DNA from: Malacoraja senta
Taxonomy: Eukaryota
NCBI GenBank assembly: GCA_038087875.1
Contig: CM075980.1
Span: forward strand, 9,362,001 to 9,426,000
Direction of reading: 5' to 3'
Length of the DNA: 64,000 bases
Below, piece after piece: positions 255 through 27,350 of the stretch; the stretch's first letter is position 1, and the number at the start of each line of letters is the position of its first letter. The translations under genes and the position numbers were made by a program. Below the pieces are notes generated by a model. It was not told the DNA's origin, made no database searches, and saw only the letters and a list, made by a program, of their open reading frames with translations.

Positions 255-348
255 GTGAGTAGAGCGCAGAATGATTAATGTTGTATCGTTTTACATTCTG
301 CTGTGTTTTTTCTAATTGTTCTGTATATTTATCTGTTTTTTCTATCAG

Positions 349-7415: not shown

Positions 7416-7589
7416 GAAACAGGCTGTCGCTTTACAGTCCAACCTCATCATACCCTTCTCCCAACCCATTCAATGCCAGAGCTTGTACTAGACTTTGTTG
7501 AACATAACAAAGTCGCTGACAGATCAGAGCAGTAATTCCACAAACATTTGCATGTAAACAGAAAACCCTTTTATTTATTCCCCATCTGA

Positions 7590-8170: not shown

Positions 8171-8184
8171 CTGATTGGTCACCT

Positions 8185-8560
8185 ATCCTCACAGATTGTG
8201 GTCCGTTGGTCAGGAGGGTGCTGATTCCGTTACAATAGTTTGGAGATGAGCTTGCTTAGGATAATGGTATTGAAAGCAGGGCTCTGGTCTATGAATAGGA
8301 GTCTGATGTAGGTGCTCGTCTCATCCAGATGTTCTAGGGACAAGTGTAGGTGCCAGAGAGATGGCATCAGCAGTGGACCTGTTGTGGTAGTAGGTGAACT
8401 GCTGTAGATCAAGGCTGCTTGGTAGGCTGAATCTAGCTGCTCTAGAAGCAATTCGTAATGGTGGATGTCAAGACATCTGGACGGTAGTCATAAAGGCATG
8501 AGATCTCGATGTTGTTTGGCATCGAGGAGATAGTGGTTTTCTTGATGCATGTCGGTACCT
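8185..8560 (-). mobile_element. Degenerate Rex1/Babar-like RT fragment
   Basis: [24 protein letters not shown] resembles the Rex1 RT motif YVRMLFIDYSSAFNTI. Confidence 0.6.
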
Positions 8561-11118
8561 CAGAATTAATTCCCGGTCTACAACTAGACCAGTCCCGTTC
8601 ACCAGAAAGAGCAAAATATATGATTTTTCGATGATCTACATTGATATCCTACACCCAGTAGCAAGTCGAACATATCCATGCTTTGACCCAATTTTCCTTT
8701 CCCCCGCGAGGCTTCGTTTGCGTTTGATGGGCGACGAGTATTTTGGAAATACTGGTCAGCGTTTAGTGTTTCATCAACGCAGTATTCCTCACCCTCCATA
8801 CGAGCTTGGATATTTGGCCCAGCAAGCTCCTGCCATCACACCTTCGCGGCGCCACTTGGTTTATTTACACTCAGAAATGACAAGGAACAATAATCTTGCT
8901 GATAGTCCCTCCCCACGAACCCCTATTCGCCAACGACATCTCTTCCCTACTCTAGAACCATTGGTGCTGGCCAGTGGCAGATCCGTCGATGGTTCTTTCC
9001 TGGGATCCTTAAACGCATCCCGTTGTTCAATGGCTTTAATGTTCACATCAATGTTAGGCTCTTCTGCGTTCCGGCTGTATTTGGTGAGATTATGTTGGTT
9101 CTGGTACAGTGAAATTGCAATGCAGTTTGTGGAAGTAGGTTGGCCAGACCAGGCATGAAGGACAATTTACATGTTAAAATTGTTCCACTTCCAACGGTGT
9201 CAGATGGTGTAACCTGAATCCAATGAATTCCAATGGTGTAACCTGAATACAATAATCCACATTTCTAAATGACCTTTAAAATGAATAAATTTGAAATATA
9301 TGTATAAAACTGCAACAGTTTCCGAAGGAAATGTCACTTCTTAACTAAAAAAAAGAGCAGGGGTCTAAAATTTGGTCAACAGAGATGGCTTTTGAGGTCA
9401 GCTACAAGGAGGAGTGCAAAGTAGTGAGATGAAGATATGTTTGTGTGAACTTCCAGAGATTTGGGATTTGCCAGGTGAAGACTGACGCCAATAATAAAAA
9501 TAGTTAAAGCCATGGATGCTTTTAGGTTCAGAATTTGAGACCTCCTGCTCTTTCCAGTTGATATATTCTTTGTGCCTGATCAGCTATTTATTAAAAATGT
9601 TCCCCCTATTGAGGTAGTTAGTCTGGTGAAATGAATAATGGGGTTTTCAATGAAATTAGGCGAGAATCAAAATATAGAACTATATCTTTTAAAGGTGCCT
9701 CGACTGCAAGCTACTGTGATATATATTCAATTGCATTGCTGTACTTTAGTAAATTTCACCAGTTGTTATATCCATCATGTACTGCATTTACAACTCATAA
9801 GTCTGCGTAACAACCTGGGGGCTCTCGTGAAAATTCACATTTGTTCTGCAATTTGGTTGTCTTCCGGAAGAAAACCCAGAGGGAAATATCTCTTATTCCC
9901 GGTTAGACTTAATTTCACAGAAGAAATGGTAGTACAAGTCTCGCATAATATAACGTAAATAAATGATTGGAAAGTTTATGAAATTGCATTTATTTGAATG
10001 CATATCATTCGTAAATAACAATATAATTGGGAACAATTCCTATGCTTATATGATCACAAGTGGATGGATCTCAGTTCACAACCGTTTGTTCTTGATTCTC
10101 CTACTCTGGGTAAAAGAGTAGAGGACGAAAGTTTAAGGTGAGAGGGGAATGATTTAATAGTAACCTGAGGGGCAACATTTTCGCACAGAGGTTGGTGAGT
10201 ATAGGGAACGAGCTGCCACAAGAGGTAGTTCAAACAGGTACTATAACAACATTAAAAAAAACATTTGGCCAGGTACATTGATAGGAAAGGTTTAGAGGGA
10301 TACGGGCCAAACGCGGGCAGGTGGGACTCGTTGGGCCGAAGGGCTGTTTCCCTACTGAATAACTCCGTGATACATGCTTACAGCGGATCTGCAGAAATCA
10401 TCGGGACCTGTACATAAAGAAGCCCAGTTGGCAGAGGAATGCGGGTGCTGTTGAGTAGGAACACTTATCTCTGTATCGTAAAATAAAGTTGTCTGGCCGC
10501 TCACAATAACCCAAGATGTAGCTTCGCGTAAATGTTCATCCTGCAAGATGTGGCGCTGCATTCGACGATCTTCTGTGGTCCCTGCCGTTATCTTGCTCTT
10601 AGATGCTGAATCAATCGAAAAATAGTGACATCATCTGCAGCACCTTTGGGATATTTACAGTTCTTGTCATTTATGGGGAGGCAAATGCAAACTGCTTGAT
10701 GTGAAAATACTGGTATGGCCCAAATGTTCGTCTCTGTGCCGTACAGTCTTGCAACAGTAGATGGCAGCATTGCATCGGTTATGAAATAATGTTCATTTAT
10801 TGCGGAGATAGGACAAATGGTCAATTATCACTGTTGCAAAATTACGATAATGTGCTTGCCCATAAACCCATCGAATGTCTACTCATTTAGCGATTATGGG
10901 TGTGGATGCGAATATACTAAGTGAGGAGCGGCTTTAACTTTTGACACATGACAGTAAAAAAGACGGAGGAAATAAACTTACTGAATGCTCAAATGCACGT
11001 GGAGAAACAAACACAAAATATTTTTCCTCGTAAGTGCAATTCATAGTGACATAGTCTTAAAAAAAGAGTTCGGACAAACAACATACAAGCAGCTCGCTCT
11101 GGGTAAAGGATGTAATAG

Positions 11119-11970
11119 GCTGGGTGAGTGGGCAAATGCATGGCAGATGCAATATAATCTGGATAAATGTGAGGTTATCCACTTTGGTGGCAAAAAACAG
11201 GAAAGTAGACTATTATCTAAATGGTGGCCGATTAGGAAAAGGGGAGATGCAACGAGACCTGGGTGTCATGGTACACCAGTCATTGAAAGTAGGCATGCAG
11301 GTGCAGCAGGCAGTGAAGAAAGCGAATGGTATGATAGCATCGATAGCAAAATGATTTGAGTATAGGAGCAGAGAGGTTCTACTGCAGTTGTACAGGGCCG
11401 TGGTGAGACCACACCGGGAGTATTACGTACAGTTTTGGTCTCCAAATCTGAGGAAATACATTCTTGCCATAAAGGGAGTACAGAGAAGGTTCACCAGACT
11501 AATTCCTGGGATGTCAGGACTTTCATATGAAGAAAGACTGGATAGACTCGGCTTCTACTCGCTAGAATTTAGAAGATTGAGGGAGGGATCTTATAGAAAC
11601 ATTCTTAAGGGCTGGACAGACTAGATGCAGGAAGATTGTTCCCGATATTGGGGAAGTCCAGGACAAGGGGTCACAGTTTAAGGATAAAGGGGAAATCCTT
11701 TAGGACCGAGATGAGAAAAACATTTTTCACACAGAGAGTGGTGAATCTCTGGAACTCTCTGCCACAGAAGGTAGTTGAGGCCAGTTCATTGGCTGTATTT
11801 AAGAGGGAATTAGATGTGGCCCTTGTGGCTAAAGGGATCAGGGGGTATGGAGAGAAGGCAGGTACAGGATACTGAGTTGGATGATCAGCCATGATCATAT
11901 TGAATGGCGGTGCAGGCTCGAAGGGCCGAATGGCCTACACCTGCACCTATTTTCTATGTTTCTATGTTTC
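11119..11970 (+). mobile_element. 5'-truncated CR1 LINE with TSD
   Basis: CR1 RT C-terminus in broken frames (RDLGVMVHQSLK, VQRRFTRLIPG, FFTQRVVNLWNSLP); (TTTCTATG)n tail; TAATAG TSD at 11113-11118 and 11971-11976; empty site in unit 3 at 48220-48225. Confidence 0.85.
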
Positions 11971-13989
11971 TAATAGAAATCTACCGCGTGGGCAGAAGAT
12001 ACTGATGCAGTCTCCGATTATAACGGTAGATGGCGGTGCAGTACCATACTTCTGTGCTGAAGCTCAACACGCCAATTCTGAAATGGGTCAACCGCAATAT
12101 TATGTGTCTGAGCTCACGTATAGACCAGACCAGCAATAATTGGATTATTTTCCCCTTGAAGGATATATTTGGGATCCAGTTGTTTTGAAATAATCAATCA
12201 AACACCGTGATGTTTCTTTTGAAAGATTCTAGACACTTAACATAATTTAGATTCCACATGTTCTCTTTTGAAAGGCCTCTGCGTTCGTAATGATGTGATT
12301 TCGGTTTGATACCATTGCTTATCTGCACTTCCTTCACCTTTGCAGGGAGCGATTTGGCGGAATCTTTCACTGCATAAAAATATTCTCCTTTCACAGTTTT
12401 CTGATTCTGCTACGGTATAACCAGCTTGAGAGCTAACCTCTCCGGTTACTCAATACTATGTTCTTTGCAACCCAACATATATCACAGGTTTTGCTCACTA
12501 CTCTCGCGATGTATCTTTCTACCTTGCCAGATGTGTGCTCATGAACCTAAAGTCCCTCTGTTCCTGCGCACTATGAACTACATTGCCCCCCCCCCGCCTT
12601 CTATACACAAGGCAAAATTTCCTAGCTCATACTTCTCTGTGAGAGATTTCATCCATCATTCATCTGCTCATTCTCGTGTCATATTTAAATTTGAAGTGCA
12701 CGCTGAGTACTCCTCTCTCTCTCCTGCGTGTAAGCCGCTATTCTATCACGATTGTCGATGTGAATATATTGCTGTCGGTAGAGAACTCAACTAGGTATGG
12801 GGATAGAGGAGAATGAAATAATTGGCCAAAATGTTCGTGCATACTGAATGTGAATAATAAGAATGTTACCTTATATATCTCCGGGAGAGCCTTTAATTTT
12901 CCCCCCGACAAACATGAAGACAGTTGCAAACAGGATTTTGTACATTTGATTGTGTTTGCTTTATCTATGACTTGCCCAAAATCGAAGCTCTGGACAATGC
13001 GGAGTGGTTGCTTTGAATTTATTGTTGCTATTCTCCATTACATAGTTTATTGTATTTGATGGACCTGTTCGGCAAATTCTGAGTAATTGTGGGTCTGGAG
13101 TCACATACATTTTAGACTTTTCCTTCTTAAAGTAACTGAAATCACTTTTAATTACAACCCAATAGCGTCATGCTTGCGTTACCAATTCCAGCTTTTAATT
13201 TCAGATTTACTTTAACTGTGATATCAGCGCCAAATCACAGAATTATATTGAATTCAGTTATCTCCAATTGAGCTGAATATCAAAAAGACTACAGGTAAGA
13301 TACGTGATTCATTAATTCAAAGAATATTAATGTTTGTTTTGCGTCTTATTCTATCACGAATGGACAATAATGGCGTTCCACGTTGGACTGGGGAGAAGAA
13401 CACGAAATATACATGAATATCATTCTCCACTTTCATTAGTGACATTACTTCAGACCTCCATGAGCTGCATTTGCCATCTACATCCACCATTCAGATGTCC
13501 GCACTCACCAAGCTTATTTCTTCAGATCTGGCCTGGCAGCTGTCTCCAGCTTTCTGCAAGGAGACCCTGAACGCGGGCTGGGACTGGGGTGAGTAGGTCT
13601 GAGGTAGCCGCGGCAACGGACTTGCCCTTGAGACAGGCAGGATACATCCATCCCCATGTTTCCATGTCCTCTAGAGATGCTGCACGACCCGCTGAGTTTC
13701 TCCAGCACATTGTGGTTTTTTAAAAATCAGCAGCTGAAGTTCTCAGTACCCCCCAAGGTTTCCATCTATAAATTTGCCAAGGTGTTTGTTTCTGAATATC
13801 AATGAAAGTCATAAAGATAAAAAATACGACGGCATGAGATGAACGCTATTCTCTTAAAAGAAACAAACAGAAAATCAAATTACATCTCATTTAACACTGA
13901 GAACTCTTGCTTGCAGAAACATCGCAGGCACGTGGACTGAGACAGAAAAAAACACACAGGAACAAATTATACATCAATTATACATACAA

Positions 13990-14700
13990 ATCTGAAAGAA
14001 ACAAACAAGATTGCGTCCTAAAACATAATAATATAAAACATGTCGATAGTGTGCAAGGAATGGGGCATGGTGTCCCTTTGTTGAGGCACGATTAGGGGTA
14101 TGTAGGTCCTTCCAAAAACTGGATAGTTGTAGGCAAGTAACTGTTCTTGAACCGGGTGGTGTACTTTCTGTAGTAGATCTGTAAAAGTTTGTTGGAGTAT
14201 TTGGAGACATAAAGTATTTCTTTAAAATTCTTTGAAAGTAGAAGCATTGGCGCTCCTTCGTGGATGCATTTGTTTGCTGGGCCCGAGACAAGTCATCCAC
14301 GATGTTAATGCCGTGAATTTAAAGCTGATAACTCTCTCCACCACTGCTCCACCAAAAACAAACTGTGCTGAGGTCCCCGGACTTCCTCTTTCTGAAGTCA
14401 GCGACCACTTCGGTCTTGTTGCTTTGGAGCGAAAGGTTGTTGTTCTGATTCCACTCAACCAAGTGTTCATCTCTCTTTATGTTCACGCAGCACTATCAGC
14501 GATTCATCCAAACAGAATGGTATTGGGGGTGAATTAATAGATGACTTTGGAGCTGTGGGTGTAAAGGAAGTAGCCATGGGCGTAAAGGAAGTAGAACAGG
14601 GTGCAAAGCACGCAGCCTTGAGATGGTCAATGGGGAGGAGATGATGGTCAATGGGGAGGAGATGATGTTCCCCATCCGCACTCGGTCACTTGAAGCTAAT
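13990..14700 (-). mobile_element. Degenerate Rex1-like LINE 3' fragment
   Basis: VERVISFKF, AQQ...LYF.R, FYRSTTES motifs in broken frames. Confidence 0.6.
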
Positions 14701-15744
14701 TCACCAAACAGTAAAATGGAGACTAATCTGATTGTAACCTCTGATGTGCGGTCCCATCCACCTCTGTAACATATCACTACCCACCTTGTTTATTAGGAAT
14801 ATTTATACCTTTGAAAAATAATACCACATTTTCAGAAACGTAATTGATGAGGCTTTCTCCATTCTGATAGATATGTTTGTTTCTTCACTTTTGAAGTAGG
14901 CATTTATTTTTGTGTAACCGGTGACGTTTAGTTTTAGATTACCCCAGACGAATTGTCCTCGCCCTTCACATGCTGATAAGACCCCGCATAATCACCTGTG
15001 CTTCAATTAAAGCACCTCTCACGCTTCTAACCGTCGAGCAATTCCTCATAAGACAACTCACTCGTTGCAGATATGGGTCTACTAGTAATCATTTTCTGAA
15101 TTGCTTCAAAGGCATTTACATTTCAATACTCTGTTCGATTCTGCGATAAAGTATAACTGAAGCACTATCAACCTCTCTCTTTTGCATTCGTTTTTTCTGG
15201 CGTAAGATGCTAACACTGTTACCTTTCCTAGGTAGTTGTTGTACCTCATTCCACCCTGTTGCGAATCCTACCAGGGAACCGATATAATTCTGCATCTCAA
15301 AACACTGCAAACTGTCATAATGTAAATAGGAAGGGCCTCGACCCGAAACGTCACCCATTCCTTCTCCCCAGAGATGCTGCCTGTCCCGCTGAGTTACTCC
15401 AGTCTTTTGTGTCTATATTGTAAAGAACATTATTTTATATCATTTACCCTTCCAAAATTGACATTTCACATGTTCCCACATCGTGCATTTACCAGGCATT
15501 TGCCCATTCACTGGAACTATCCACATGCACGGCTGCCTTGTTTGGTTCTTCATGTCATTAGCAAATTCAACAGCCAGACATTTTTCAGCCGTGTGTATAC
15601 ATTTTTGGAAATTGGGGCTCCAGCACCGATCTATGAGGCACATACGTTTTTGCATCTTTCCAACCAGAAATTAGCCTGTTTATGCGTTTTCTATATTTCC
15701 AACTGATCGCCCAATGTTCTGTTCTTCCGATGACCATAAACTTC

Positions 15745-16830
15745 AGGACTCTTAGGATATAGGAGCAGGAGTAGGCCATTCGGTCCTTCGAGCAGCACCT
15801 CCATTCAATATGATCATGGCTGATCATCCAAAATCAGTACCCCGTACCTGCTTTCTCCCACATCCCTTGATTCCGTCAGCCCTAAAAGCTATATCTAACT
15901 CTCTCTTGAACATATCCAGTGAATTGGCCTCCACTGCCTTCAGTGGCAGAGAATACAACAGATTCACAACTCTCTGGGTAAAAATGTGTTTCCGCATCTC
16001 AGTCCTAAATGCCCTACCTCTTATTTTTAAACGGGAACCCCTGCTTCTTGACTCCCCTAACATCGGGCATATGTTACCTGCATCTAACGCATCCAATCCC
16101 TTAAGAATGTTATATCTTTCTATAAGAACCCCTCTCAGCCTTCCGAATTCCAGTGCATATAAGCCCAGTCAATCATTTGTCAGTTACACCATACCGGGAA
16201 TTAATCTGGTGAACCTACGTTGCACTCCCTCAATAGAAAGAATGTCCTTCTTCAAATTAGGCAACTAAAACGGCACACATTTCTCCAGGTGTGGTCTCAC
16301 CAGGGCCCTGCAGTAGGTCCACCTTTCTCCAATACTCAAATCCTCTCGCTATGAAAGCCTACATGCAATTTGCTTTCTTCACTGCCTGCTGTACCTGCAT
16401 GCTTTCTTTCAGTGACTGATGTTCAAGGACACACAGGTCTCGTTGCACCTCCCCTTTCCCTAATCTGACACCATTGAGATAATAATCTGACCTTTTTTTG
16501 CCACCAAAGTGGATAACCTCATATTTATCCACACAATACTGCATCTGCCATGCATCTGCCCACTCACCCATCTTGTCCGCCACCCTGCAGCCTCATAGCA
16601 TCTTCCTCGCAGCTCACACTGCCACCCAGCTTTGTGTGATCCGCAAACTTGGAGATGTTACATTTAATTCCTTCATCATCGTCAATATATATTGTAAATA
16701 ACCGAGGTCCCATCACTGAGTCTTGTGGCACTCCACTAGTAACTGCCTGCCATTCTGAAAAGAACCCACTAATTCCTACTCTTTGCTTCCTGTCTGCCAT
16801 ACAGTTCTCCATCCGTCAATACCCTACCCG
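15745..16830 (-). mobile_element. CR1 LINE fragment
   Basis: VTSGVPQDSVMGPRLFTIYIDD, ISKFADHTKLGG, FTQRVVNL motifs; CR1 3' tail at the left end. Confidence 0.8.
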
Positions 16831-16959
16831 CAATATTACCGTATTATTTACCATATCAACCTTTGATTCATCTCCTTAACAAATGCCTGCTCGAAATTAT
16901 ATTTGCCTGGCATGGTACTTCTTCAAAGCCTTCCGTTAAGTTAGTGAAACATCGTTCAT

Positions 16960-17650
16960 GAATTCATAGATTGTAGGAGGAGAATTTGGCTATTCGGCCC
17001 ATCAATTCTACCCCGCCATTCTATCACGCTTGATTTATCTTTTCTTCTCAACCCCATTCTCCTGACTTCTTCTCATAACCCTTAACATAGTTACTAATCA
17101 ACAACCACTCAATCTCCACCTTAAAAATATCAATTGACTTGGCTTCCACAGCCTTCTGTGGCAATGAATTCCACAGATTCACCACCCTCTCACTAAAGGA
17201 TTTCCTCCTCATCTCCTTTTTAAATGGACGTGCTTTTATTGTGAGGCATTCACCTCTGGTCCTAGACTCCCCCGCTCGGCGAAACATCCACTCCACATCC
17301 ACTCTATCCAGGCCTTCACAATTCGGTTAATTTCGAAGAGGTCTCTCCCCTCTCATCCTCATAAATTATATAGCGAGCACGGATCCAGTACCGTCAAACG
17401 CTCATCACACGTTAACCCAATTATCCCTGGGATCACCCACGTAAACCTCCTCTGGACCCTCTCCAATGCCAGCTCATCCTTCCTCAGATTGGAGCCCAAA
17501 ACTGCTCACAACACTCCAAATGCGGTCTGACCAGTGCCTTATAAAGGCTCAGCATTACATCCCTGTTTTTGTATTTTGTTTTTGTGTTCTGGCCCTCTCG
17601 AAAGAAATGCTTTCCTTGCTGCCGACTTGTAAATTAACTTTTGGGAAATC
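16960..17650 (-). mobile_element. Second CR1 3' fragment
   Basis: GESRTRG...RPFKKEMRR..FSERVVNLWNSLPQKAVEA. Confidence 0.7.
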
Positions 17651-18299
17651 CTGCACCAGCACTCCTGAGCCCCTTTGCTCTCTCTTTATGAACAACATTT
17701 TAACTTTTGCGAGATAATCTGGATCATTTTGTCAGTACCCTTTATATCGTTTTGGTAACAGCTTCCAATATTTCTCCAGGACAGATGTGCAACCAACTGG
17801 CCTGCGGTGGACGACTTTCTGTCTCTCTTCCTTTCTGAACGTCCATGGTAGTTTTGAAATAAAAAAATTCAAACCAAAGAATTCAGTACTGCAAGGGAAT
17901 TAATTAAGACTCTAGAATGAAATACAATACATCTCAACGCCCTGTCAGCCCGATGAAAAATTACCATTTAAATAATCTGCCATCTCCATATTCCCCTTTA
18001 ATTATACGACTGCGAATTATTTGTAGGAAAAGACAAATGTATTATTTTATACTTATTTGGAAGCTTAAGGGGATTAGTGCAAAGTCTGTACAGTCCCATC
18101 ATTCAACACAGCTGACCCCTTTTACTCAGTAAATAACAGCCTGCTCTCACACAACAGTTCCCGTCTGAGTCTCAGAGCTTCTCTCCCCCTCCCCCCGCCG
18201 CCGTTGAGATCACCGTTGTCTGCTATTCTCCTCCCACTTAAAACAATATGAATATTTCTTTCTCCCAAAGGGCTGGAGCTGCAGTAATCTCATTTTACA

Positions 18300-18458
18300 C
18301 CGAGCCAATAATTCAGTGAATCGATGTCACGTGGATAAAGGTTTAGCCTGAATAATTAATAATTAGTGACGTTGGGATGCTGAAGACTTTAAAAGAGAAG
18401 CGTCGAAAGGGCTCAAAACCTCGCTTGTGTAGCAAAATATTGCTTTATCACCTTCGAC
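18300..18458 (+). promoter_or_regulatory. IgL cluster 2 proximal promoter (octamer-like site degenerate)
   Basis: Same block as cluster 1, with GTTTAGCCT at 18341-18349 and TCACGTGG. Confidence 0.5.
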
Positions 18459-18504
18459 ATGGCTGCATGGGTTTGGGTTCTCGCCTTGGTGACCTGTTTC
18501 CACT
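18459..18504 (+). CDS. IGL: IgL cluster 2 leader exon
   Basis: Same sequence as the cluster 1 leader; GTGAGT donor at 18505. Confidence 0.9.
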
Positions 18505-18598
18505 GTGAGTAGAGCGCAGAATGATTAATGTTGTATCGCTTTACAATCTGCTGTGTTTTTTCTAATGGTTCTGTATATTTATCTGTTTTTTCTATCAG

Positions 18599-18946
18599 GT
18601 ATAAACGCGGAGACTACCTTGACTCAGGTCCCGGCTATATCAACGTCGCCGGGAAAAACCGTCAAAATCACCTGTACCCTGTCAGGGGGCAGCATCGGTA
18701 GCTACTACACGAGCTGGTACTGGCAGAAGCCGGACAGCAGCCCTGTCTTCGTGTGGTATCACAGCTCCACCAGAGGCACCGGAATTCCAGACAGATTCAC
18801 GGGTTCCGTGGACTCATCCATTAACCAAATGCATTTAACCATCACCAACGTGCAATCGGAGGACGCGGCCGATTATTACTGTGGTGCGTGCCACGGCAGT
18901 AACTACAAATTCACCTTTGGGAGAGGAACCAAACTGAATCTAAGCA
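18599..18946 (+). CDS. IGL: IgL cluster 2 germline-joined VJ exon (CDR3 CGACHGSNYKFTF)
   Basis: Intact V and J motifs and splice sites. Confidence 0.95.
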
Positions 18947-21339
18947 GTAAGTAAAATATTCACGTTTTGATACAACGAATCGTTGAACTTAGGTTTTGCT
19001 TTCTTCATAAATCCTCGGTAGAAAGATCATATTAAACCTAAGTAGAACACAACGGGTCAGCTAGCATCTCCGGTAGACGTATGGATGGGCAATATTTCGT
19101 GTCGGAACAAAGTCTCTTTGGGAGACTGGACCGAAAGGAAAATCGTCGTTCTATGTCCTCCAGAGATGCTGTCGGATCCGCTGTGCTGTACTCAAGATGG
19201 CAACTTGTTTCTCCTACGTGAACTTGGTGTTTATGATCCTTTATCTCCATCCCTACAACACTCCGAGAAATCTGCGCTCACCTAACCGTGGCTTCTTGAT
19301 CATCGTGGAATTTAACGCCTTCACATACTGACAGTTGTGCTTCAAAGTTGTTACATTCTGGAATGATATCCTGAAGCTCTATTTTCCCCTTTCTTCCCAG
19401 ATGTTCATGAAATCTGTTCCTTTAACAGAAATACCGATTCTCTGATTTGAAGTATCCTCAAATGGCGGGTTTCGTCCGAGACTGCTGCTATTGATCACTT
19501 TGCTTCAATATAAGCGTAATGCAAACGAAAACTGTTGCCGTTTCCTGAAGAAATGTTCGGGAAATTATGAGATTTTATTAGTTTTCGGTATATTGTGGAT
19601 ACGGAGAATACCAACTTTGACGGTGGGCCAAACAGAATCATTGGAAGCATCCAAATGAAAGTTAATAAGCATTTGGCAAGGGATGTTGGTGAATTAACTG
19701 GGATATTTTTTAAATTGCAAATACCCATTAGGGCAAATTGCGCGAAGTTGATTTCTGATCGTTTTAATGATACCATGAGGGTGAAGTGGCGTTTCGACAG
19801 GTCTACATGCGCTCCCGACAATAGCGCTAAAACTAATTGTCAAGGAAAAGGTAAAAAAACAAATATTTAAACGCTTCGCACGGCACCATTTCAATTCCCT
19901 TTACGCGAAAGTGTGGAGGATTGTTGCAAGTCTGATTCAGCTCCGAAATTAGAAAGAAGAGCAGAACCGTATTCGGATTCATTTCTCGTTCAGCTAGCCA
20001 TTGCCACCTTAGCTGATCACATTTGTGTGGATATGCCGTCAGACACTTTGTACCCACCTTGTAGAACCTGCAAGGGATTTTGATGCTGGTTCTCCGATTG
20101 TCATCGAGTGTACGATGCAGCAGAAAACACAGCCTGTTCATTATGCTGTTAAACATGATCCCTCTGATTGTTGATTTTATTTACGGGCAGTTGGTAGACC
20201 GACATGTTAAAAAGCTTAAAAGAGCGAGACATCATTTTGCCATTTTCGGATAAATTAGTGCAGAAATGGGCACACAAGTATACGAGGTTATTGCTGAATT
20301 GCCTAGAATCGAAAGATTGGAAGGATATATTAGAGCCTCTTTAAATTCAGCATTAGCTTGATATGTTTTTTTAAGTCCGAATATGTTGGATGTTAAACCC
20401 AGAGCTGTCTCGATATGTGTCAGAAGGAATTTGAATCTGACAAAACATTTCTTTAGTTTTACCTTTCATATTGCTGATCGCCTCAATGCTTGAATCAATG
20501 GACTTTCTGGACGATGTGGAAGTTTCACTAATAAGTAACATTCTAAAGACTATTCCGGGAAAGAATTGGGATTACTGTTTAAACAAGCATTAATTTGGAA
20601 ATGCTGCTCATTCTGCCAGGATGAGTTGTGATTCCATTTTTCCTTCCCGTTTCCATGATCTGAAGAAAATCGTAGGCCACATGTTTTACCAAACCTCGGA
20701 TATTCGCACAGTAAAAATTAACATATCATGTTTCTGCTGTATAAAATGAGGTTTATAAATCAACGGTAATTGTAAAACCAGTGCAGTACACGGCCATAGA
20801 GCCACAGTCATAGAGTTATGCAGCGGTGGAACAGTCCTGAAGTCCACCTATTTCATGCCGACCGAGGTGCCCTACTTGAGCTGGTCCCATTTGCGCGTGC
20901 CAGGCCCATATCTCTTTGAACCTTTCTTATCCAAGTATTAATTCAAATGTTTTTTTAAGTGGTGTTATTGTACCTGCCTCATCAACTTCGCCGGGGAACT
21001 CTTTCCATGGAGTCAACGCATTATGTGTACAAATGTTGCACTGAACCTAAACCCTCTAATTCTTCATTCTCCTACTATGGGGAAAACCATAAGTATTCCG
21101 TGCGCTAACCCTATGTATTCCCCTCGCGATTTTGTATACCGCCATGCGATCACCCTAAGGACTTCTACATACCAAGGACTAACGTCCTCGCATGTCCAAT
21201 CTATGCCTATAGTTCAGGCGTTCGAAACCTGGCACCGTCGTCGTAAATCTTGCCTGGAGTCGTTCCAACTGAATCGATTCTGACTTTTAACGTCAACTGA
21301 TAAATAACTCACTTGAATATATTTCAATTCTATTTTCAG

Positions 21340-21662
21340 GTCCGCGGCCCCCCACCGTTTCCATTCTGGCGCCTTCAATGGGTGAAGTCACCGCAAAAAG
21401 TACTGCCACCCTGGTGTGTTTGGTTAGCGGGTTCAATCCGGGCGCTGTTGACATTGAATGGACCGTAGACGGCAGTGCGAGAAGTGATGGCGCTGCGACC
21501 AGCCGGGTCCAGCAGGAGAAGGACAACTCGTTCAGTGCGAGCAGTTACCTGACTCTGCGAGCCTCCGACTGGAACTCACACGACCTTTACTCCTGTGTGG
21601 TTAAACACGAAACCCAGGCAAACCCGATTAAGGCCAATATCGCCAGATCCAGTTGCCTCTAA
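21340..21662 (+). CDS. IGL: IgL cluster 2 constant exon
   Basis: Acceptor TTTTCAG|GT; intact; differs from cluster 1 C at 2 nt (one silent, one Pro>Arg). Confidence 0.95.
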
Positions 21663-21926
21663 TTCAAAGGATGAAATTCCCGAATTGCTGCATTTCTTTG
21701 TAAATTAATGCAATATTCAGATATCGAATGTTCGCTTTAACAGGGTATTTGTTCAAACGCAGCACGTGTGCATTTTGTTGCCTTGAATGCGCTGTCCGTA
21801 TTTTACGATGAACTGAAAAACAATAATGTAACATTTAATGCAATAAACCCGATTATTCTATTTACGATGTATCGTTGTCATTTTCTGTGCAAATGTCCTT
21901 GCCTTCAAAACAATAAAAACAACAAT

Positions 21927-23749
21927 CTGATATGTTCCGCACAAACTTTTTGCCTCTGGTTGAGAAAGCCGAAAAAGATTTTGATCGCTGGTCAGTCTTA
22001 CCGCTATCCCTCGTGGGCCGGATAAATCTGGTTAAGATGGTTGTCCTACCCAAATTCCTGTATCTTTTCCAGCATGTCCCCATACTTATCACCAAATCTT
22101 TTTTTGACAAATTAGAAAGGACAATATCTACATTCTTATGGGGTAGGAAACCGGTCAGAATCCGAAAGGCGATACTGCAGTCGCCTAAGAGTGATGGCGG
22201 TTTGGCCCTCCCTGCTTTTAGGCGATACTACTGGGCAGCTAACTTTCAAAAACTCCTGTATTGGATGAATGATGATTGCGAGCACGCACCGATCTGGGTA
22301 TACATGGAAAAGGCGAGTTCACGTCTCCCATTGCGGTCTGTCCTATGTTCCCAACTCCCCCTTTCTATAACATCTGTGGGTGCAGGCCCTTTCGCTCAAG
22401 ATATGGAGTCAATTTAGGAAAAACCTCGGTTTACAGGGTCCTTCCATCTTGACCCCACTGCTTAAAAATCAATTTTTTAAACCTTCAAGTATAGACCACG
22501 CATTTAAAACCTGGCATAGTAATGGCATCAGTAGTATTAAAAACCTATATAAGGATGGTATATTCTCATCGTTCGCGGAGCTCTCGTCTAACTACAACCT
22601 CCCAAACTCCCACCTTTTTCGGTTTTTCCAGATTAGGGATTTTGTGAAGAAGACATTTCCCTACTTCCCAAATCGCCCTCCTGAAACCATGACTGATATC
22701 ATCTTAGCTTTAGACCCCAATCGGAAGAAATGCATCTCTATTTTGTATAATTTGCTAGGGCCGGTTTTATTGAAACCTCATACCTCATTAAAAGCTGCGT
22801 GGGAGGGAGAGCTGAATACGCAATTAACAGACCAGCAATGGGACTCTGCCTTGGATTTGATCCACTCTTCTTCCATATGCGCTCGTCATGGCCTAATCCA
22901 ATGCAAAGTCCTTTACAAAGTCCACTATACAAATGCAAGATTAGCTAGAATGTACCCAGCTGTGAATGACACCTGTAACAGATGTAGTCAATCTCCTGCC
23001 AACCATAGCCACATGTTTTGGTCTTGCCCTAAGCTAGCAGCCTTTTGGAGGAGTGCTTTTGAATTGATAAGCAGAGCTTACGACCAGACTATTCTTCCAA
23101 ATCAGCCATTTTCGGTACCCCTCCCAATACCAACCTCTCTGTTGCGGTGAAACGGGTCCTAGCTTTTACAACCTTGTTAGCTCGGAGACTGATCTTGCTT
23201 AGTTGGAGGCTCACCTGTGCCCCGACACACGCCCGTTGGATGAAGGAGGTGCTTTACAATCTGAAACTTGAAAAACGTAGGTTCTCTCTCAAAGGCTCTA
23301 CCAAGACATTCCTAGATACATGGAACCTTTTCTTTGAACTGGTTAACTCTCTTACCTTGTCCCCGGACTCGGAAGAGGACTGAGTGTTCTCCATCATCGT
23401 TTTGTTCTACAGCAGCTGCTTTCCCCTTAATCCCCCCTCCCTACAATTGTTTATTTAGATATATATGTATATATATATATATATTTATTTTTTATTTTTT
23501 CTATTTTTATTTTTATATAGCACATTTTGTTTCGTCTATTCTACCATTTGTGTGTGGATGTGTACGTATGTGAGTGTTGTTTGTCCCCGTTTGGCTCCGA
23601 CCGGAATTGTGTGGGTTGAAGGTGGGTAAGGGTAAGAGTTTTGAGGATCGCTTACATACTGTTGTACAATTATGCCTTGATTATTACTGTCTGTTATTAT
23701 TGTATGTATGTAAATTGCCGTGAAATTCAAATAAAAAGATTAAATTCGG
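21927..23749 (+). mobile_element. 5'-truncated L1-clade LINE downstream of cluster 2 C exon
   Basis: ORF2 C-terminal pieces 21932-23383 (LSLVGRINLVKMVVLPKFLYLFQ, GGLALP, CNRC...HMFWSCPKL) split by two frameshifts; near-perfect TSD AATAAAAACAAYAAT at 21912-21926 and 23750-23764; absent from units 1, 3 and 4. Confidence 0.85.
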
Positions 23750-25476
23750 AATAAAAACAATAATGTCCGATGATGCCAGTGTATATAAACTGGCATTTAG
23801 TGAAACGTCGTTATATTTCAAATAAACTGCGTTTTCATGATTGATGATGATCCATGTGTTAGGACAGCTGAAGGGACTGCTTGCAAGTACCCCCCGATTG
23901 AAGAAATTAGGTGCAAATCCGTGTCTCCTATTTTGGATATCCCAGAAATACGGAAGGACAGTCTTGGCATTACGCTAATATGCTTAAATGACCCAAATGT
24001 CTCTAATCGATCCGCACAAAATATCACAATATATCAGTTTATTCCATGAAAACGCGATGAAAAGTGTGGTTTGACGAATTCGTAAACCGCGGCATTACCG
24101 TGGTCTTAAGTCAGCTCAACATTAATCACCAGAAGTGGTCATATATTTAAACAGTATAACGAGAGGAATAAAGTTCAGGCTCGGCGGGGTGAGCGCTAGA
24201 CTCACCTTGAAGGGGGGCTTCGCGCCAACAATTAACCGAAGTAAAAGTAGTTACTTCGCGATTCCCAGAAATGGGATAAACAGCTTTCGGGATATGGCAA
24301 CTGCTTGGATGTTCTTCTCTGGGAATTAAAAAAATGTTTAACAGGAGGAATAAATTGGGAGAATTTATGTACTGTGGCTGGGGAAAATCTGCTTCCGATG
24401 TGGGTAAGTCCTATCTGGAGAGACCCTCCAGTATGATGTCAATTTCCAGTAGGAAAATAACAGGTTAGGGACGTGTGCTGTCTATTTTCACCCCATCCCT
24501 TCCTCCACGGTTATCATTCACTCCCCTTCCCCCTTATTTTATGGCTGATTTCACTTCTTGTTCCCTTTTCACCCCCAGCCTTTGCCAAGTAAATCCCACC
24601 GCCATCTGCTAATCAATCCCCTCTCACATGTATCCACCTATCACTTGGCAGGCTGTATCACACCTCATATCTATTTTCCAGCTTTCTCCCCTCTGTTCCA
24701 ATTAGTCTGCAGAAGGTTCTCAACCTGAAATGATGCCTCGCCATTCTAATCAGATGTTGCCTGACCCGGCGAGTCATGTAGAGTCCAATGGCGAAGTCTT
24801 GTTTTGCTGGATTTGTCCGGTATTATGATTACCTCTCTGATCGAATTTACCTCTTCAATCCACTTCTTGTCAGAAAAAACATAATCTCGGAGGCCCCATT
24901 AATTAAATAGAGAGCCGAGATTAGAAAGTGAGAGTAGAAAGAAAAGTAACGTTTTATCCTTACATATATACTATTTTCATTTTCTTGAATCAGCTTTTTC
25001 AACGATATAATAAATTTACTAAATGTGATTTTTTTTAAAGAGACAAATCTCGTATTTTATAGTTTTCCAGCCGCTTGTAAAATTGAAGTAATTAGGTGGG
25101 GAAAGCCTCAAAGTTAGTGACAGAAGGAGAAACTCCGTCCTCAGCATTCCCCTCTCTTGTTCCAGGGCCAAGGCTTGATTGCTGGCTTGCATGAAGCCGA
25201 CAACTCCTGGGGCCTTGTGGCTACCTTCCGCATCCGAAGCAGGCAAATGTGGACGGACGGCGGACCACATCTGGAACAATTCGCATGATATCCGATTACA
25301 ATTCGATACCCAACATTCTCACAATTCCACTTGTGAAGCTCACTACGTATATTTATCAGTTAATGCAAAAGTAGTTACAAAGCCATAATTGACCGATATT
25401 TCCCACCATGGCCAAGGTACATTATGATTCGTTCTTCACTAAAGGCTGGAGCTACGAACGTTTCCAAACAACGGAG

Positions 25477-26200
25477 AGGGGACATTGGCCCAGCGCTGGA
25501 GTTGCTGCCTCACAGCGCCAGGGACCCGGGTTCAATCCCGACTATGGCTGCTGTCTGTATGCAATTTGTACATTCTCCCCAGAGCCGCGTGGGATTTATC
25601 TGGGTGCTCCGGTTTCCTCCCACGTTCCACAGACGTACAGATATTTTTAGACTAATTGCCTTCTGTAAATTGTCCCTATTGGATGGATATACTGTATGGG
25701 CTGATTGCTGGTCGGTGTTGACTCGATTAGCCGAAGGGCCTGTTTCCACGCTGTACTGAAGTAAACTAAACACTTCCGTCCACGAACTTACTGGATTGGA
25801 ATGCTCGTCCGTTTCTTCACTTCCTAGTTCAGTTGCAAAAATAAGACAAAGTGTCTTATTTGTCCCGACAACTGTGCCCCCCCCCTCCCCCATCAACCCC
25901 TGAAGCTCCCAGGGATCTATTCTTGGTCCCACCAATTCACATCATACCAATTCATGGGCGGGCACGGTGCCGCAGCGATAGAGTTGTTGCGTGACAGCGC
26001 TTACAGCGTCAGAGCCACGGGTTCGATCTCGGCTACAGGAGCTTCTCTGTACGGAGTTTGTACGTTCACACCGTGACCTGCGTGGGGTTTCTCCGAGAAC
26101 TTCGGTTTCCTCCCACACTCCAAAGGATAGTGTTAATGTGCGGGGATGTGGACTCGGTGGGCTGACTGGCCTGATTCCGCTATATTTCTAAACTAAACGA
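25477..26200 (+). mobile_element. Two V-SINEs (unit 2 copies of 6674-7415)
   Basis: Colinear copies of the unit 1 SINEs. Confidence 0.7.
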
Positions 26201-26384
26201 ATGCCTTTGAAACAGGCTGTCGCTTTACAGTCCAACCTCATCATACCCTTCTCCCAACCCATTCAATGCCAGAGCTTGTACTAGACTTTGTTGAACATAA
26301 CAAAGTCTCTGACAGATCAGAGCAGTAATTCCACAAACATTTGCATGTAAACAGAAAACCCTTTTATTTATTCCCCATCTGAAC

Positions 26385-27350
26385 CGTAATGCCACGATTA
26401 AACACGGATATCGCCAAAACGACGCAGGTCGGTGGACTCATCGATCGTGTTCCACTCGCGGAGACATGAGTTCCCTGGGCCTCATCTGTTACCCCACCAG
26501 CCTCTGCATCCAACACATAATTCACAGACATTTTCGTCACCTCCCAACGTGATCCCACCACTAAGCACATCTTCCAATCTCCAACCTTTTCCGCATTCCG
26601 CAGAGACCATTCCCTCCGCAACTCCTTGGTTCACTCATCGCTTTCCACTGAAGCAAATGTCCTTATTCCTCCACCCTCAGCTCCACCCAGCGACCTCGGC
26701 AGTGAGATTCACATGCACCTCCTCTAACCTTCTCTCCTCGATCTGGTGTTCCGGATGTGGGCTACTGAACATCGGCTAGACCAAGCGTAGACTCGGCCAC
26801 CGTTTAACTGAACTTGCGAATGGCTACTAGATCTCCCGATGGCTAGCCCATTTAACACTCCCCCCCTTCCCATTACACGGACCTTTCCGGCCTGAGCCTC
26901 CTCCATTGTCAGAGCGTGTGTACACGTACATTGGAGGAATAGCAACACATTTCGCTCGGGTAGCTGATTGGTCACCTATCCTCACAGATTGTGGTCCGTT
27001 GGTCAGGAGGGTACTGATTCCGTTCCAATAGTTTGGAGATGAGCTTGCTTAGATAATGGTATTGAAAGCAGGGCTCTGGTCTATGAATAGGAGTCTGATG
27101 TAGGTGCTCGTCTCGTCCAGATGTTCTAGGGACAAGTGTAGGTACCAGAGAGATGGCATCAGTAGTGGACCTGTTGTGGTAGTAGGTGAACTGCTGTAGA
27201 TCAAGGCTGCTTGGTAGGCTGAATCTAGCTGCTCTAGAAGCAATTCGTAATGGTGGATGTCAAGACATCTGGACGGTAGTTATTAAGGCATGAGATCTCG
27301 ATGTTGTTTGGCATCGAGGAGATAGTGGTTTTCTTGATGCATGTCGGTAC
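26385..27350. mobile_element. Penelope-like (+) and Rex1-like (-) fragments, unit 2 copies
   Basis: Colinear with 7590-8560. Confidence 0.6.

What the first reader, a model, noticed from the sequence alone, without database searches (positions are those of the whole stretch)
18886..18897. Germline paralogues diverge mainly in CDR3/CDR2, often by contiguous substitutions like those of shark hypermutation
Seen: V2 and V3 (348 nt) differ at 11 nt. Nine lie in CDR2 (CAC vs GGA) and CDR3 (GCG TGC CAC GGC vs GTG AGG CTC ACC), all in codons that change amino acid; the two framework differences are silent. The same 12-nt CDR3 window differs at 5 nt for V1/V2 and 4 nt for V1/V3 (636-647, 18886-18897, 37475-37486), while C1 and C2 differ at only 2 of 323 nt. 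Many differences are adjacent doublets or triplets (GGA/CAC, ACG/GTG, GG/CC, AA/GG, GA/CT, GG/AC, GG/CA). Established: somatic hypermutation of shark light chains characteristically produces contiguous 2-5 nt substitutions, and pre-joined genes cannot diversify by V-J joining. Inference: the array may build a hard-wired CDR3 repertoire after duplication, through germline AID-type mutation, micro-conversion from other clusters or somatic variants, or very strong positive selection. The variable codons are 2-5 after the Cys, on the V side with constant length, so they are not N-region. Caveat: strong hotspots (AGCT in CDR1, AGTA in CDR3) are unchanged, and some doublets may be independent hits on different branches.
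Basis: partly seen in the sequence, partly recalled or inferred. Interest (0 to 1): 0.8.

Follow-up and report, generated by a model that had tools for sequence, protein, structure and literature searches.

The report
CDR divergence among pre-joined skate genes
Four tandem, ready-assembled antibody light-chain genes of a skate differ mostly at antigen-contact codons; this pattern is already known for skate light chains and fits selection for diversity plus patchy copying between copies better than germline hypermutation.

Summary
The window holds four (not three) head-to-tail lambda/type II light-chain clusters of a rajid skate, each with a germline-fused VJ exon. V1-V3 differ by 2.3-2.9% in introns, but the 12-nt CDR3 stretch (codons 96-99, Kabat L90-L93) has 8 substitution steps. 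It is the densest of 13,485 windows across the repeat unit. Two other skate genomes show the same CDR-focused divergence.

The SHM-like reading is not supported. V1 keeps the CDR3 12-mer shared with two other genera. Two of the three remaining same-branch events (510-511, 558-559) carry exactly the state of the fourth copy, V4. Changed sites avoid AID and Pol eta motifs and show no transition bias. The excess stops at both V-exon borders, and V1's CDRs did not change at all.

V exons are about four times more mosaic than their flanks, and in A. radiata a whole CDR3 cassette has moved between clusters.

Best reading: diversifying selection on contact codons plus short-tract exchange among paralogues. 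This is the known kind (Anderson et al. 1995, skate type I). Donors for the unique V2 and V3 CDR3 states could not be sought elsewhere in this genome.

The parts
1..18250 (+). Repeat unit U1 (leader, fused VJ exon, C exon, spacer)
   Evidence: Four-copy direct repeat with an 18.25-18.6 kb period.
209..254 (+). V1 leader exon
   Evidence: ATG followed by a GT donor; spliced product aligns with skate lambda chains.
349..696 (+). V1 germline-fused VJ exon (348 nt)
   Evidence: Continuous reading frame from the splice acceptor through Cys, CDR3 and the FGRG motif to the GT donor. Pfam V-set E = 1e-16.
510..512 (+). V1 CDR2 first codon (codon 54, Kabat L50), GGA
   Evidence: Codon table. GGA is also found in A. 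radiata A1, A6 and A8. Aligns with the first CDR-L2 residue of human lambda chains.
558..559 (+). FR3 codon 70 doublet (GT>AC), a derived state shared by V1 and V4
   Evidence: 13 of 14 outgroup genes have G and T here; only V1 and V4 have A and C.
636..647 (+). V1 CDR3 hot stretch, GTG TGG GAC AAC (ancestral state)
   Evidence: Identical 12-mer in A. radiata A1, A6, A7 and R. longicauda R2. Densest 12-nt window of the unit.
4383..4705 (+). C1 exon (323 nt)
   Evidence: ORF and Pfam C1-set E = 3e-25; 94-96% identical to skate lambda C.
18251..36840 (+). Repeat unit U2
18599..18946 (+). V2 fused VJ exon
18760..18762 (+). V2 CDR2 codon 54, CAC
   Evidence: C and A at the first two bases are shared with V4 (CAA); the third base is unique to V2.
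18886..18897 (+). V2 CDR3 hot stretch, GCG TGC CAC GGC (the finding's coordinates)
   Evidence: 5 nt from the ancestral 12-mer. 637C and 641C are unique to V2; 642C is shared only with V3.
21340..21662 (+). C2 exon
36841..55346 (+). Repeat unit U3 (gene part homogenised with U1/U2, older spacer)
   Evidence: Gene part is 2.3-2.9% from U1/U2; the spacer is 6-13% from them.
37188..37535 (+). V3 fused VJ exon
37475..37486 (+). V3 CDR3 hot stretch, GTG AGG CTC ACC
   Evidence: 4 nt from the ancestral 12-mer. 639A is shared with V4, 642C with V2, and 643T is unique to V3.
39928..40250 (+). C3 exon
55347..64000 (+). Repeat unit U4 (cut by the window end), an older lineage
   Evidence: About 8% (J-C intron) to 13% from U1-U3. 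It usually keeps the outgroup state at noncoding sites.
55695..56036 (+).
   Evidence: Intact frame; CDR3 is 6 nt shorter.
55982..55993 (+). V4 CDR3 hot stretch, GTG ACG GAT GAC
58567..58889 (+). C4 exon

Best explanation
The window is part of a tandem array of at least four lambda (type II) immunoglobulin light-chain clusters of a rajid skate. Each cluster is leader - germline-fused VJ exon - about 3.7 kb intron - C exon. Because V and J are already joined, each cluster encodes one fixed combining-site half, and primary light-chain diversity is the set of paralogues.

The units evolve in concert. Kilobase-scale homogenisation and short-tract exchange keep introns, frameworks and C exons 2-3% apart. 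Selection for amino-acid diversity drives and preserves replacements at a few antigen-contact codons: Kabat L50 (the first CDR2 residue) and L90-L93 (the tip of CDR3).

V1 keeps the canonical, cross-genus CDR3 (GVWDNS). V2 and V3 left it stepwise: G642C in their common ancestor, then separate single-base hits in each. The 'contiguous' differences seen in pairwise comparison are composites of three things: hits on different branches, dense hits in a 12-nt target, and small patches shared with another paralogue (V4).

Shown here: the anatomy, the rates, the polarity of changes, the mosaic structure and the exon-limited excess. Inferred: selection as the cause, and conversion as the mechanism of patch sharing.
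For: Identity of the locus:
- V-set and C1-set domains.
- 70% identity to sandbar shark lambda; 84-96% to Amblyraja, Leucoraja and Rhinoraja 'lambda-1 light chain-like' proteins.

Rates:
- Intron divergence is 2.3-2.9%. Frameworks have pN about equal to pS and to the intron. CDR pN is 0.056-0.12 and the hot codons 0.43-0.68.
- The CDR3 stretch is the top outlier of 13,485 windows.

Replication in three genera, six independent nearest-neighbour pairs:
- Noncoding 2.3%.
- Framework pN 1.6% against pS 5.8% (pN/pS 0.28, P = 1e-4).
- CDR pN 10.9%, 4.7 times noncoding (P = 1e-15).

Polarity:
- V1's 12-mer is identical in A1, A6, A7 and R2.
- V1's CDRs are 3.3% from A1/A6 but 8.6% and 4.3% from V2 and V3.
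- CDR changes per branch are 0 (V1), 7-8 (V2) and 3 (V3), with P = 0.012-0.017 for none on V1. A uniform mutator does not predict this unevenness.
- 642C is shared only by V2 and V3, together with 296A and 395G, which gives a nested stepwise path.

Hot codons are combining-site positions. They align with GTWDSS and the first L2 residue of solved human lambda chains. The codons that vary among V1-V3 include the most variable ones in the other two genera: 99, 54, 97 and 70.

Exchange between copies:
- Informative sites are mosaic up to about 2.1 kb and then uniformly group U1 with U2 (permutation P = 4e-4).
- The gene part of U3 is homogenised against an older spacer.
- Four-gamete incompatibility is 41% in V exons against 10% in the flanks (A 33 vs 14%, R 39 vs 4%). 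Synonymous sites are equally incompatible.
- The derived doublets 558-559 and 510-511 are shared with V4.
- In A. radiata a tract from CDR3 to about +350 nt of the intron switches A2 from grouping with A1 to grouping with A3.

Prior report of the same pattern in skate type I genes: Anderson et al. 1995, abstract.
Against: - The strict within-CDR test is not significant: pooled CDR pN/pS is 1.37 (P = 0.40).
- Synonymous divergence of the V exon is itself about twice that of C-exon synonymous sites and introns (5.9% vs 2.9%, P = 0.05). Part of this is CpG.
- In the hot codons pS is also high (3 of 15.2 sites). New point mutations plus selection alone do not explain this. It points to older CDR cassettes, exchange or multi-base events.
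- With site weights taken from the other genera, the window's pairs have more adjacent differences than expected (3 observed vs 0.44, P = 0.006; pooled 14 vs 6.5-9.3, P = 0.002-0.07).
- Same-branch multi-base events are 3 of 14 against 5% in noncoding DNA (P = 0.03).
- No donor was found for 637C, 641C, 642C, 643T or 512C among the 18 genes examined.
- Selection itself is inferred. No population or expression data were available.
Confidence: 0.6

Rival explanations
1. Ordinary templated gene conversion only. The V2 and V3 CDR3 and CDR2 states are old cassettes copied from other lambda clusters of the same genome, or retained while the flanks were homogenised. No accelerated substitution occurred in place.
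For: - V exons are about four times more homoplasious than their flanks, including at synonymous sites.
- pS is raised in the V exon and in the hot codons.
- CDR states recur across genera: codon 99 AAC/GAC/GGC/ACx, codon 54 GGA/GAA/CAA, and Cys at codon 97.
- The doublets 558-559 and 510-511 equal V4's state.
- A CDR3-carrying tract has been exchanged in A. radiata.
- More joined light-chain arrays lie 0.26, 0.81 and 1.0 Mb away on the same piece.
Against: - No donor for 637C, 641C, 642C, 643T or 512C exists in the window or in 14 genes of two other genera.
- The nested pattern (642C shared by V2 and V3, then different neighbours changed in each) fits stepwise change in place better than independent copying from different donors.
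- Any tracts would have to be very short: under 23 nt at codon 54 and under 59 nt at codon 70.
Confidence: 0.22
2. A germline, non-templated multi-nucleotide mutation process, either AID-initiated shark-type hypermutation or an error-prone polymerase, acts on the pre-joined V exons in germ cells and produces tandem 2-3 nt substitutions in the CDRs.
For: - Same-branch multi-base events are 3 of 14 against 5% background (P = 0.03).
- There is an adjacency excess under the cross-genus site-weight null in the window (P = 0.006).
- Synonymous third positions change together with neighbours in the hot codons.
- Shark SHM does make 2-4 nt tandem changes.
Against: - Changed sites avoid the motifs: 2 of 9 G/C changes in WRC/GYW, 1 of 8 A/T changes in WA/TW, and none of the 7 CDR3 sites.
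- The canonical hotspots are untouched.
- The ts:tv ratio is 6:10, not transition-biased, whereas shark SHM is biased to transitions and G:C.
- The excess ends at the exon borders: leader intron 1.2%, first 100 nt of the J-C intron 1.7%, against 4.5% in the exon. SHM is known to spread 1-2 kb from the promoter (established for mammals, assumed for skates).
- V1 has no CDR change, and the youngest duplicates A1/A6 (0.3% noncoding divergence) have none.
- Two of the three multi-base events match V4 exactly, which has a chance of about 0.012 if they were non-templated.
- Adjacency inside the 12-nt stretch equals the expectation.
Confidence: 0.07
3. Artefact: the CDR differences come from assembly error, collapsed or mixed haplotypes, or somatically mutated B-cell DNA in the sequenced tissue.
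For: Tandem 18-kb repeats at 97-98% identity are hard to assemble. The tissue source is unknown.
Against: - The units carry distinct large insertions (1.29 kb in U1, 1.84 kb in U2, several in U3) and hundreds of unit-specific substitutions.
- All four genes are intact.
- The same CDR-focused pattern appears in two independent assemblies of other genera.
- A consensus assembly cannot carry the mutations of individual B-cell clones.
Confidence: 0.03
4. Soma-to-germline feedback (the Steele/Blanden/Rothenfluh idea): somatically mutated and selected VJ transcripts are reverse-transcribed and converted into germline clusters.
For: The excess is confined to the exon, as a cDNA-templated patch would be. 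The hypothesis has been published for mammalian V genes.
Against: - There is no SHM signature in the changes.
- The leader exon and C exon, which are also in the mRNA, show no excess.
- Introns are intact.
- The mechanism itself is unproven.
Confidence: 0.01

Closest known systems
Germline-joined type I (sigma-2) light-chain clusters of the little skate (Anderson, Shamblott, Litman and Litman 1995, J Exp Med 182:109; PMC2192082)
   Same: Skate light-chain clusters with V and J fused in the germline. Differences between clusters lie preferentially in CDRs, with replacement substitutions exceeding neutral ones. There is no combinatorial or junctional diversity.
   Different: A different isotype (lambda/type II here). 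Here the genes are seen in chromosomal context as an 18.5-kb tandem array, with intron, spacer and C-exon controls and cross-genus polarity.
Lambda (type II / NS3) light-chain clusters of cartilaginous fish (sandbar shark: Hohman et al. 1993; reviews PMC5192425 and PMC4279169)
   Same: The same isotype, with V-J fused in the germline in every species studied and the same V(J)-C cluster layout. Identity is 70% to sandbar shark and 84-96% to annotated skate lambda chains.
   Different: None in kind. This is a further array from another rajid genus. I could not read Hohman 1993.
Diversifying selection with interlocus gene conversion in multigene immune families (germline VH/VL CDRs; MHC peptide-binding codons)
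   Same: Contact codons have a raised nonsynonymous rate while the rest of the gene is conserved or homogenised. Site patterns are mosaic, motifs are shared across species, and synonymous divergence is raised next to the selected codons.
   Different: Here the whole VJ, including CDR3, is hard-wired, so CDR3 itself is under germline selection. This comparison rests on my own knowledge of those systems.
Chicken pseudo-V gene conversion
   Same: Short templated patches move CDR variants between homologous V sequences.
   Different: The chicken process is somatic, AID-dependent and unidirectional from pseudogenes. Here the exchange is inferred to be germline, between functional paralogues, on an evolutionary time scale.
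Shark somatic hypermutation with tandem 2-4 nt substitutions (Lee et al. 2002; Ott et al. 2018, PMC5931798)
   Same: Adjacent-base differences occur in light-chain CDRs.
   Different: There is no WRCH or WA targeting, no transition or G:C bias, no spread into introns and uneven change among copies. Most doublets are composite or templated.
'Signature of somatic hypermutation written into germline V genes' (Blanden, Rothenfluh, Zylstra, Weiller and Steele 1998; cited in PMC7064991)
   Different: It is a controversial hypothesis for mammals. The tests here do not support it for this array.

Membership tests
Cartilaginous-fish lambda (type II) germline-joined light-chain cluster | V and J are contiguous in germline DNA, with one exon from the splice acceptor to the J splice donor and no RSS or intervening DNA | tested here: met
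   348-nt (V4: 342-nt) open exons run through Cys-CDR3-FGRGTKLNLS to a GTAAGT donor in all four units.
Cartilaginous-fish lambda (type II) germline-joined light-chain cluster | Cluster layout: leader, V(J), and a single C exon a few kb downstream, repeated as independent clusters | tested here: met
   The C exon lies 3.7 kb (U1) or 2.4 kb (U2-U4) after VJ. Four units repeat with an 18.25-18.6 kb period.
Cartilaginous-fish lambda (type II) germline-joined light-chain cluster | Sequence kinship with lambda/type II chains | tested here: met
   70% to sandbar shark lambda. V is 84-90% and C 94-96% identical to Amblyraja and Leucoraja lambda-1-like chains. V-set and C1-set domains.
Cartilaginous-fish lambda (type II) germline-joined light-chain cluster | Expressed as a light chain in B cells | not testable with these tools
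   No transcript data. A near-identical CDR3 (AAWDNSNYKFT) occurs in a Leucoraja erinacea light-chain record (P0098).
Diversifying selection on CDRs of germline V paralogues | CDR nonsynonymous rate exceeds a neutral reference | tested here: met
   Pooled CDR pN is 10.9% against 2.3% for noncoding DNA (P = 1e-15). In the window, hot-codon pN is 0.43-0.68 against 0.023-0.029 for the intron.
Diversifying selection on CDRs of germline V paralogues | pN greater than pS within the CDRs themselves | tested here: inconclusive
   Pooled pN/pS is 1.37 (P = 0.40). In the window, W2/W3 give 0.120 vs 0.023, but on only about 22 synonymous sites.
Diversifying selection on CDRs of germline V paralogues | Frameworks under purifying selection (pN less than pS) | tested here: met
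   Pooled framework pN/pS is 0.28 (P = 1e-4).
Shark-type (AID-initiated) hypermutation acting in the germline | Mutations target WRC/GYW and WA/TW motifs | tested here: not met
   2 of 9 G/C changes (26% expected) and 1 of 8 A/T changes (46% expected) fall in motifs. None of the 7 CDR3 sites does.
Shark-type (AID-initiated) hypermutation acting in the germline | Transition and G:C bias | tested here: not met
   ts:tv is 6:10 in the VJ exon, the same as noncoding DNA at 56:70. 9 of 17 changes are at G/C.
Shark-type (AID-initiated) hypermutation acting in the germline | The mutation domain follows distance from the promoter and includes the leader intron and proximal J-C intron | tested here: not met
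   Pooled divergence: leader intron 1.2%, VJ exon 4.5%, J-C intron +1..100 1.7%.
Shark-type (AID-initiated) hypermutation acting in the germline | Excess of non-templated tandem substitutions on single lineages | tested here: inconclusive
   3 of 14 events against 5% background (P = 0.03), and an adjacency excess under one null but not inside the 12-nt stretch. Two of the three events match V4.
Interlocus gene conversion / concerted evolution | Phylogenetic incongruence in blocks along the sequence | tested here: met
   Runs test P = 4e-4. Four-gamete incompatibility is 41% against 10%. An A. radiata tract spans 634-1051. The gene part of U3 differs from its spacer in divergence.
Interlocus gene conversion / concerted evolution | An identifiable donor for each converted patch | tested here: inconclusive
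   A donor state is present in V4 for 558-559 and 510-511. None was found for the unique CDR3 states of V2 and V3. The other clusters of this genome could not be read.

The most novel reading that the evidence does not exclude
A germline, non-templated multi-nucleotide mutation process (SHM-like or polymerase-zeta-like) contributes measurably to CDR diversification of pre-joined lambda genes in skates. Part of the hard-wired CDR3 repertoire would then be written by a mutator rather than by point mutation and conversion alone.
Probability: 0.08. Interest if true: 0.75.

Novelty: new member of a known kind. Interest (0 to 1): 0.3.

Why it matters
Pre-joined light-chain genes cannot use V-J joining, so how they obtain CDR3 diversity is a genuine question about the early evolution of antibody repertoires. 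This array, with two sister-genus arrays, gives a clean chromosomal-scale view:
- One canonical CDR3 (GVWDNS, the same WD motif as in human lambda chains) is kept across genera.
- Neighbouring duplicates leave it within about 1% of neutral time.
- V exons are reshuffled more than their flanks.

That supports the classical picture of diversifying selection plus conversion and argues against a germline hypermutation imprint. It adds detail to something already described in 1995 and does not open a new kind of system. The residual excess of multi-base changes and of synonymous change in the hot codons is the only part that could still hold a surprise.

Tried and rejected
1. I first used V4 as the outgroup for V1-V3. 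This was partly misleading, because V4 is itself derived in CDR3 and shares patches with V1-V3. Polarity was redone with 14 genes of two other genera. The motif test used the V4-based ancestor. With the corrected ancestor the CDR3 sites still lie outside the motifs, but I did not recompute it formally.

2. I searched the window for donors of each CDR3 12-mer. The only hits were two one-mismatch matches in a spacer repeat with no flank similarity, which is chance.

3. The V-only protein search missed full-length lambda chains because of the length filter. It was repeated with a longer query.

4. I tested CpG hypermutability as the whole cause of the raised V-exon synonymous rate. It explains part of it, but the C exon is richer in CpG and shows no excess.

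5. I considered independent germline V-J joining (junctional diversity) as the source of the CDR3 differences and rejected it. The variable codons lie 2-5 after Cys, on the V side of an unchanged SNYK-FTFG stretch. The fusion is shared by all lambda genes of all species. V4's 6-nt gap is also found in A4 and in all R. longicauda genes.

6. Hohman et al. 1993 and the full text of Anderson et al. 1995 are not held in the library, so only the Anderson abstract was used.

7. The 260-aa minus-strand ORF in the U1-specific insertion has no Pfam match.

8. R3 (an insertion in the intron) and A8 (cut by the locus end) were left out of the noncoding comparisons where stated.
Full report
WHAT IS THERE

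The window has no gaps. It consists of four head-to-tail repeat units: U1 1-18250, U2 18251-36840, U3 36841-55346 and U4 55347-64000, the last cut by the window end. Each unit carries, on the + strand:
- a 46-nt leader exon,
- a 94-nt intron,
- one exon encoding a complete V domain already fused to J (Cys-CDR3-FGRGTKLNLS, then a GTAAGT donor),
- a C exon 2.4-3.7 kb downstream.

Pfam finds V-set and C1-set domains. The closest named protein in the first search is the sandbar shark lambda chain at 70%. A wider search shows that the nearest relatives are 'lambda-1 light chain-like' proteins of the skates Amblyraja radiata, Leucoraja erinacea and Rhinoraja longicauda (V 84-90%, C 94-96%). The window therefore comes from a rajid skate of another genus. 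Lambda (type II) genes are germline-joined in all cartilaginous fish studied (reviews). The fourth, V4 (55695-56036), is intact and has a CDR3 two codons shorter.

THE OBSERVATION

Every count in the finding reproduces. To judge it against chance I aligned the units.
- Among U1-U3 the J-C intron differs by 2.3%, 2.8% and 2.9%, and U4 is about 8% away.
- The whole VJ exon (3.2-3.7%) is hardly above that. The distribution inside the exon is what is extreme.
- The 12-nt stretch 636-647 has 8 parsimony steps where 0.48 are expected. It is the single densest of 13,485 twelve-base windows in 14.8 kb of aligned unit.
- Frameworks have pN about equal to pS and to the intron rate. The four codons 96-99 have pN 0.43-0.68.
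- Aligned with solved human lambda chains, these codons are the GTWDSS tip of CDR-L3 (Kabat L90-L93), and codon 54 is the first CDR-L2 residue (L50). I know these as major antigen-contact positions from the literature, not from a test here.

RELATED ARRAYS

I fetched the lambda arrays of A. radiata (8 VJ exons over 130 kb) and R. longicauda (6 VJ exons).
- Noncoding DNA groups strictly by species: W1-3 at 2.3-2.8%, W against A at 8-9%, and W against R at 10-11%.
- V1's CDR3 12-mer GTG TGG GAC AAC is identical in A1, A6, A7 and R2.
- V1's CDRs are only 3.3% from those of A1/A6, but 8.6% and 4.3% from its neighbours V2 and V3.
- So V1 keeps a canonical, conserved combining site, while V2 and V3 left it recently. 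CDR changes per branch are 0, 7-8 and 3, with P about 0.01-0.02 for none on V1.
- The CDR-focused pattern is general. In six independent nearest-neighbour pairs from the three genera, noncoding divergence is 2.3%, framework pN 1.6% (pS 5.8%) and CDR pN 10.9% (P = 1e-15 against noncoding).
- The youngest duplicates, A1 and A6 (0.3% noncoding divergence), have identical CDRs.

ARE THE CONTIGUOUS DIFFERENCES TANDEM MUTATIONS?

In raw pairwise comparison, runs of two or more bases make up 4 of 8 difference blocks in V1/V2, against 5% (16 of 322) in U1/U2 noncoding DNA. With the fourth copy and the outgroups, most of this dissolves:
- 642C is shared by V2 and V3 only, as are 296A and 395G. So GG/CC (641-642) and GA/CT (642-643) each lie on two branches.
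- 409 and 410 changed in different copies.
- GG/AC at 645-646 compares two derived copies.
- The third base of the GGA/CAC triplet is a separate V2 change.

Three same-branch multi-base events remain out of 14 (P = 0.03 against background). Two of them, GT>AC at 558-559 (V1) and the CA/GG difference at 510-511 (V2), carry exactly the state of V4, a non-sister copy. That is what a copied patch looks like, and it has about a 1% chance if the changes were non-templated. The third, AA>GG at 645-646 (V2), has no donor in the window, but the single-step intermediate GAC is in V4 and GGC recurs in the other genera.

Inside the 12-nt stretch, the number of adjacent differing sites equals what the number of hits predicts (P 0.12-0.99). 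Under a broader null, with site weights taken from the other genera, the window's pairs do show an excess (3 observed vs 0.44 expected, P = 0.006). The other arrays mostly do not, and the pooled result is 14 against 6.5-9.3. A modest excess of neighbouring changes therefore cannot be excluded.

TESTS OF AN SHM-LIKE PROCESS

- Changed sites are not enriched in WRC/GYW (2 of 9) or WA/TW (1 of 8). None of the seven CDR3 sites is in a motif, and the strong hotspots are untouched (the ancestor used there was V4-based).
- ts:tv is 6:10, the same as in noncoding DNA. Shark hypermutation is biased to transitions and G:C and targets WRCH.
- The excess ends at the exon borders: leader intron 1.2%, VJ exon 4.5%, first 100 nt of the J-C intron 1.7%.
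- The C exon is a clean control: pS 2.9% against 3.1% for the intron.

These results, together with the frozen CDRs of V1, argue against a promoter-coupled mutator acting on all copies.

EXCHANGE BETWEEN COPIES

- Informative sites among U1-U3 form a mosaic up to about 2.1 kb and then uniformly group U1 with U2 (P = 4e-4).
- The gene part of U3 is 2-3% from U1/U2 while its spacer is 6-13% away.
- In all three arrays, pairs of informative sites fail the four-gamete test far more often inside the V exon than in the flanks (41% against 10%). Synonymous sites fail as often as replacement sites.
- In A. radiata, A2 groups with A1 in the 5' flank and distal intron, but with A3 from CDR3 to about +350 nt of the intron. 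A CDR3 cassette has moved, or its flanks were homogenised around it.
- Co-segregating doublets shared by several paralogues also exist there: 394-395 in A and 378-379 in R.

WHAT SELECTION ALONE DOES NOT EXPLAIN

- Pooled CDR pN/pS is only 1.37 (not significant).
- V-exon synonymous sites are about twice as diverged as C-exon synonymous sites (5.9% against 2.9%, P = 0.05). CpG accounts for part of this, but the C exon is richer in CpG.
- In the hot codons the synonymous rate is also high (3 of 15 sites).

This fits CDR cassettes that are older than their flanks and are moved around or protected from homogenisation. It would also fit multi-base mutation.

VERDICT

The kind of thing is known: Anderson et al. 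1995 reported for skate type I joined genes that differences lie preferentially in CDRs and that replacements exceed neutral changes. The idea that hypermutation leaves a signature in germline V genes is also already in the literature.

The best-supported mechanism is diversifying selection on a few contact codons, together with concerted evolution and short-tract exchange. Conversion from unsampled clusters is the main rival for the CDR3 of V2 and V3. A germline SHM-like process is unlikely, at about 7-8%.

The decisive step I could not take is a search of the rest of this genome, which holds more joined light-chain arrays on the same piece, for donors of the V2 and V3 cassettes.

Noticed in passing
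window 36841-55346 (U3), boundary near 41000-42000: U3 is a hybrid unit. Its first 5 kb or so (5' flank through the C exon) is 2-3% from U1/U2, but its spacer is 6-13% from them, as far as U4 is. This is kilobase-scale homogenisation or an unequal crossover within the array.
   Followed up: partly
window 18889-18891 (V2 codon 97, TGC): V2 has an unpaired Cys at the tip of CDR3 (GACHG). A Cys at the same position recurs in A. radiata A2, A3 and A8 (TGT) and in L. erinacea P0053. It may be a maintained CDR3 type with an unknown partner.
   Followed up: no
window 37119-37122 (V3 leader intron): There is a cluster of three changes in four bases in noncoding DNA: ACTC in V3 against GTTG in V1/V2 and ATTG in V4. 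One of the three states is shared with V4 and one with the A. radiata genes. It is either a small patch or a multi-base event outside any codon.
   Followed up: no
window 55994-56002 (V4 CDR3) and L006:24734-25075 (A4): V4's 6-nt shorter CDR3, with GAT at codon 98 and ACA before TTC, is shared with A. radiata A4. All six R. longicauda genes also lack these 6 nt. Yet V4 and A4 are not close in noncoding DNA (12.4%).
   Followed up: partly
window 2688-3975 (U1), 21909-23746 (U2), and several in U3 (41705-42336, 46443-47395, 52785-53671, 54371-55105): These are unit-specific insertions. The U1 insertion sits in the J-C intron and holds a 260-aa minus-strand ORF (3140-3922) with no Pfam match. It is probably a decayed retroelement.
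   Followed up: partly
window 349-350, 18599-18600, 37188-37189: V1-V3 begin the VJ exon with GT, giving Cys at the leader/V junction. V4 and all 14 outgroup genes have CT (Ser). V1-V3 also share Ala for Glu at leader residue 3. These are changes on the V1-3 stem.
   Followed up: no
L006:10001-27683 (A. radiata CM021390.1): The annotated gene for P0096 spans 17.7 kb and two clusters. An unannotated intact VJ exon (10142) with its own C exon (12564) lies inside it. This is probably an annotation merge.
   Followed up: no
window 220-257 and equivalents: A CACTGTG heptamer overlaps the leader splice donor in every unit. Another reader noted it as a cryptic RSS (s1-141413). I did not examine it.
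   Followed up: no
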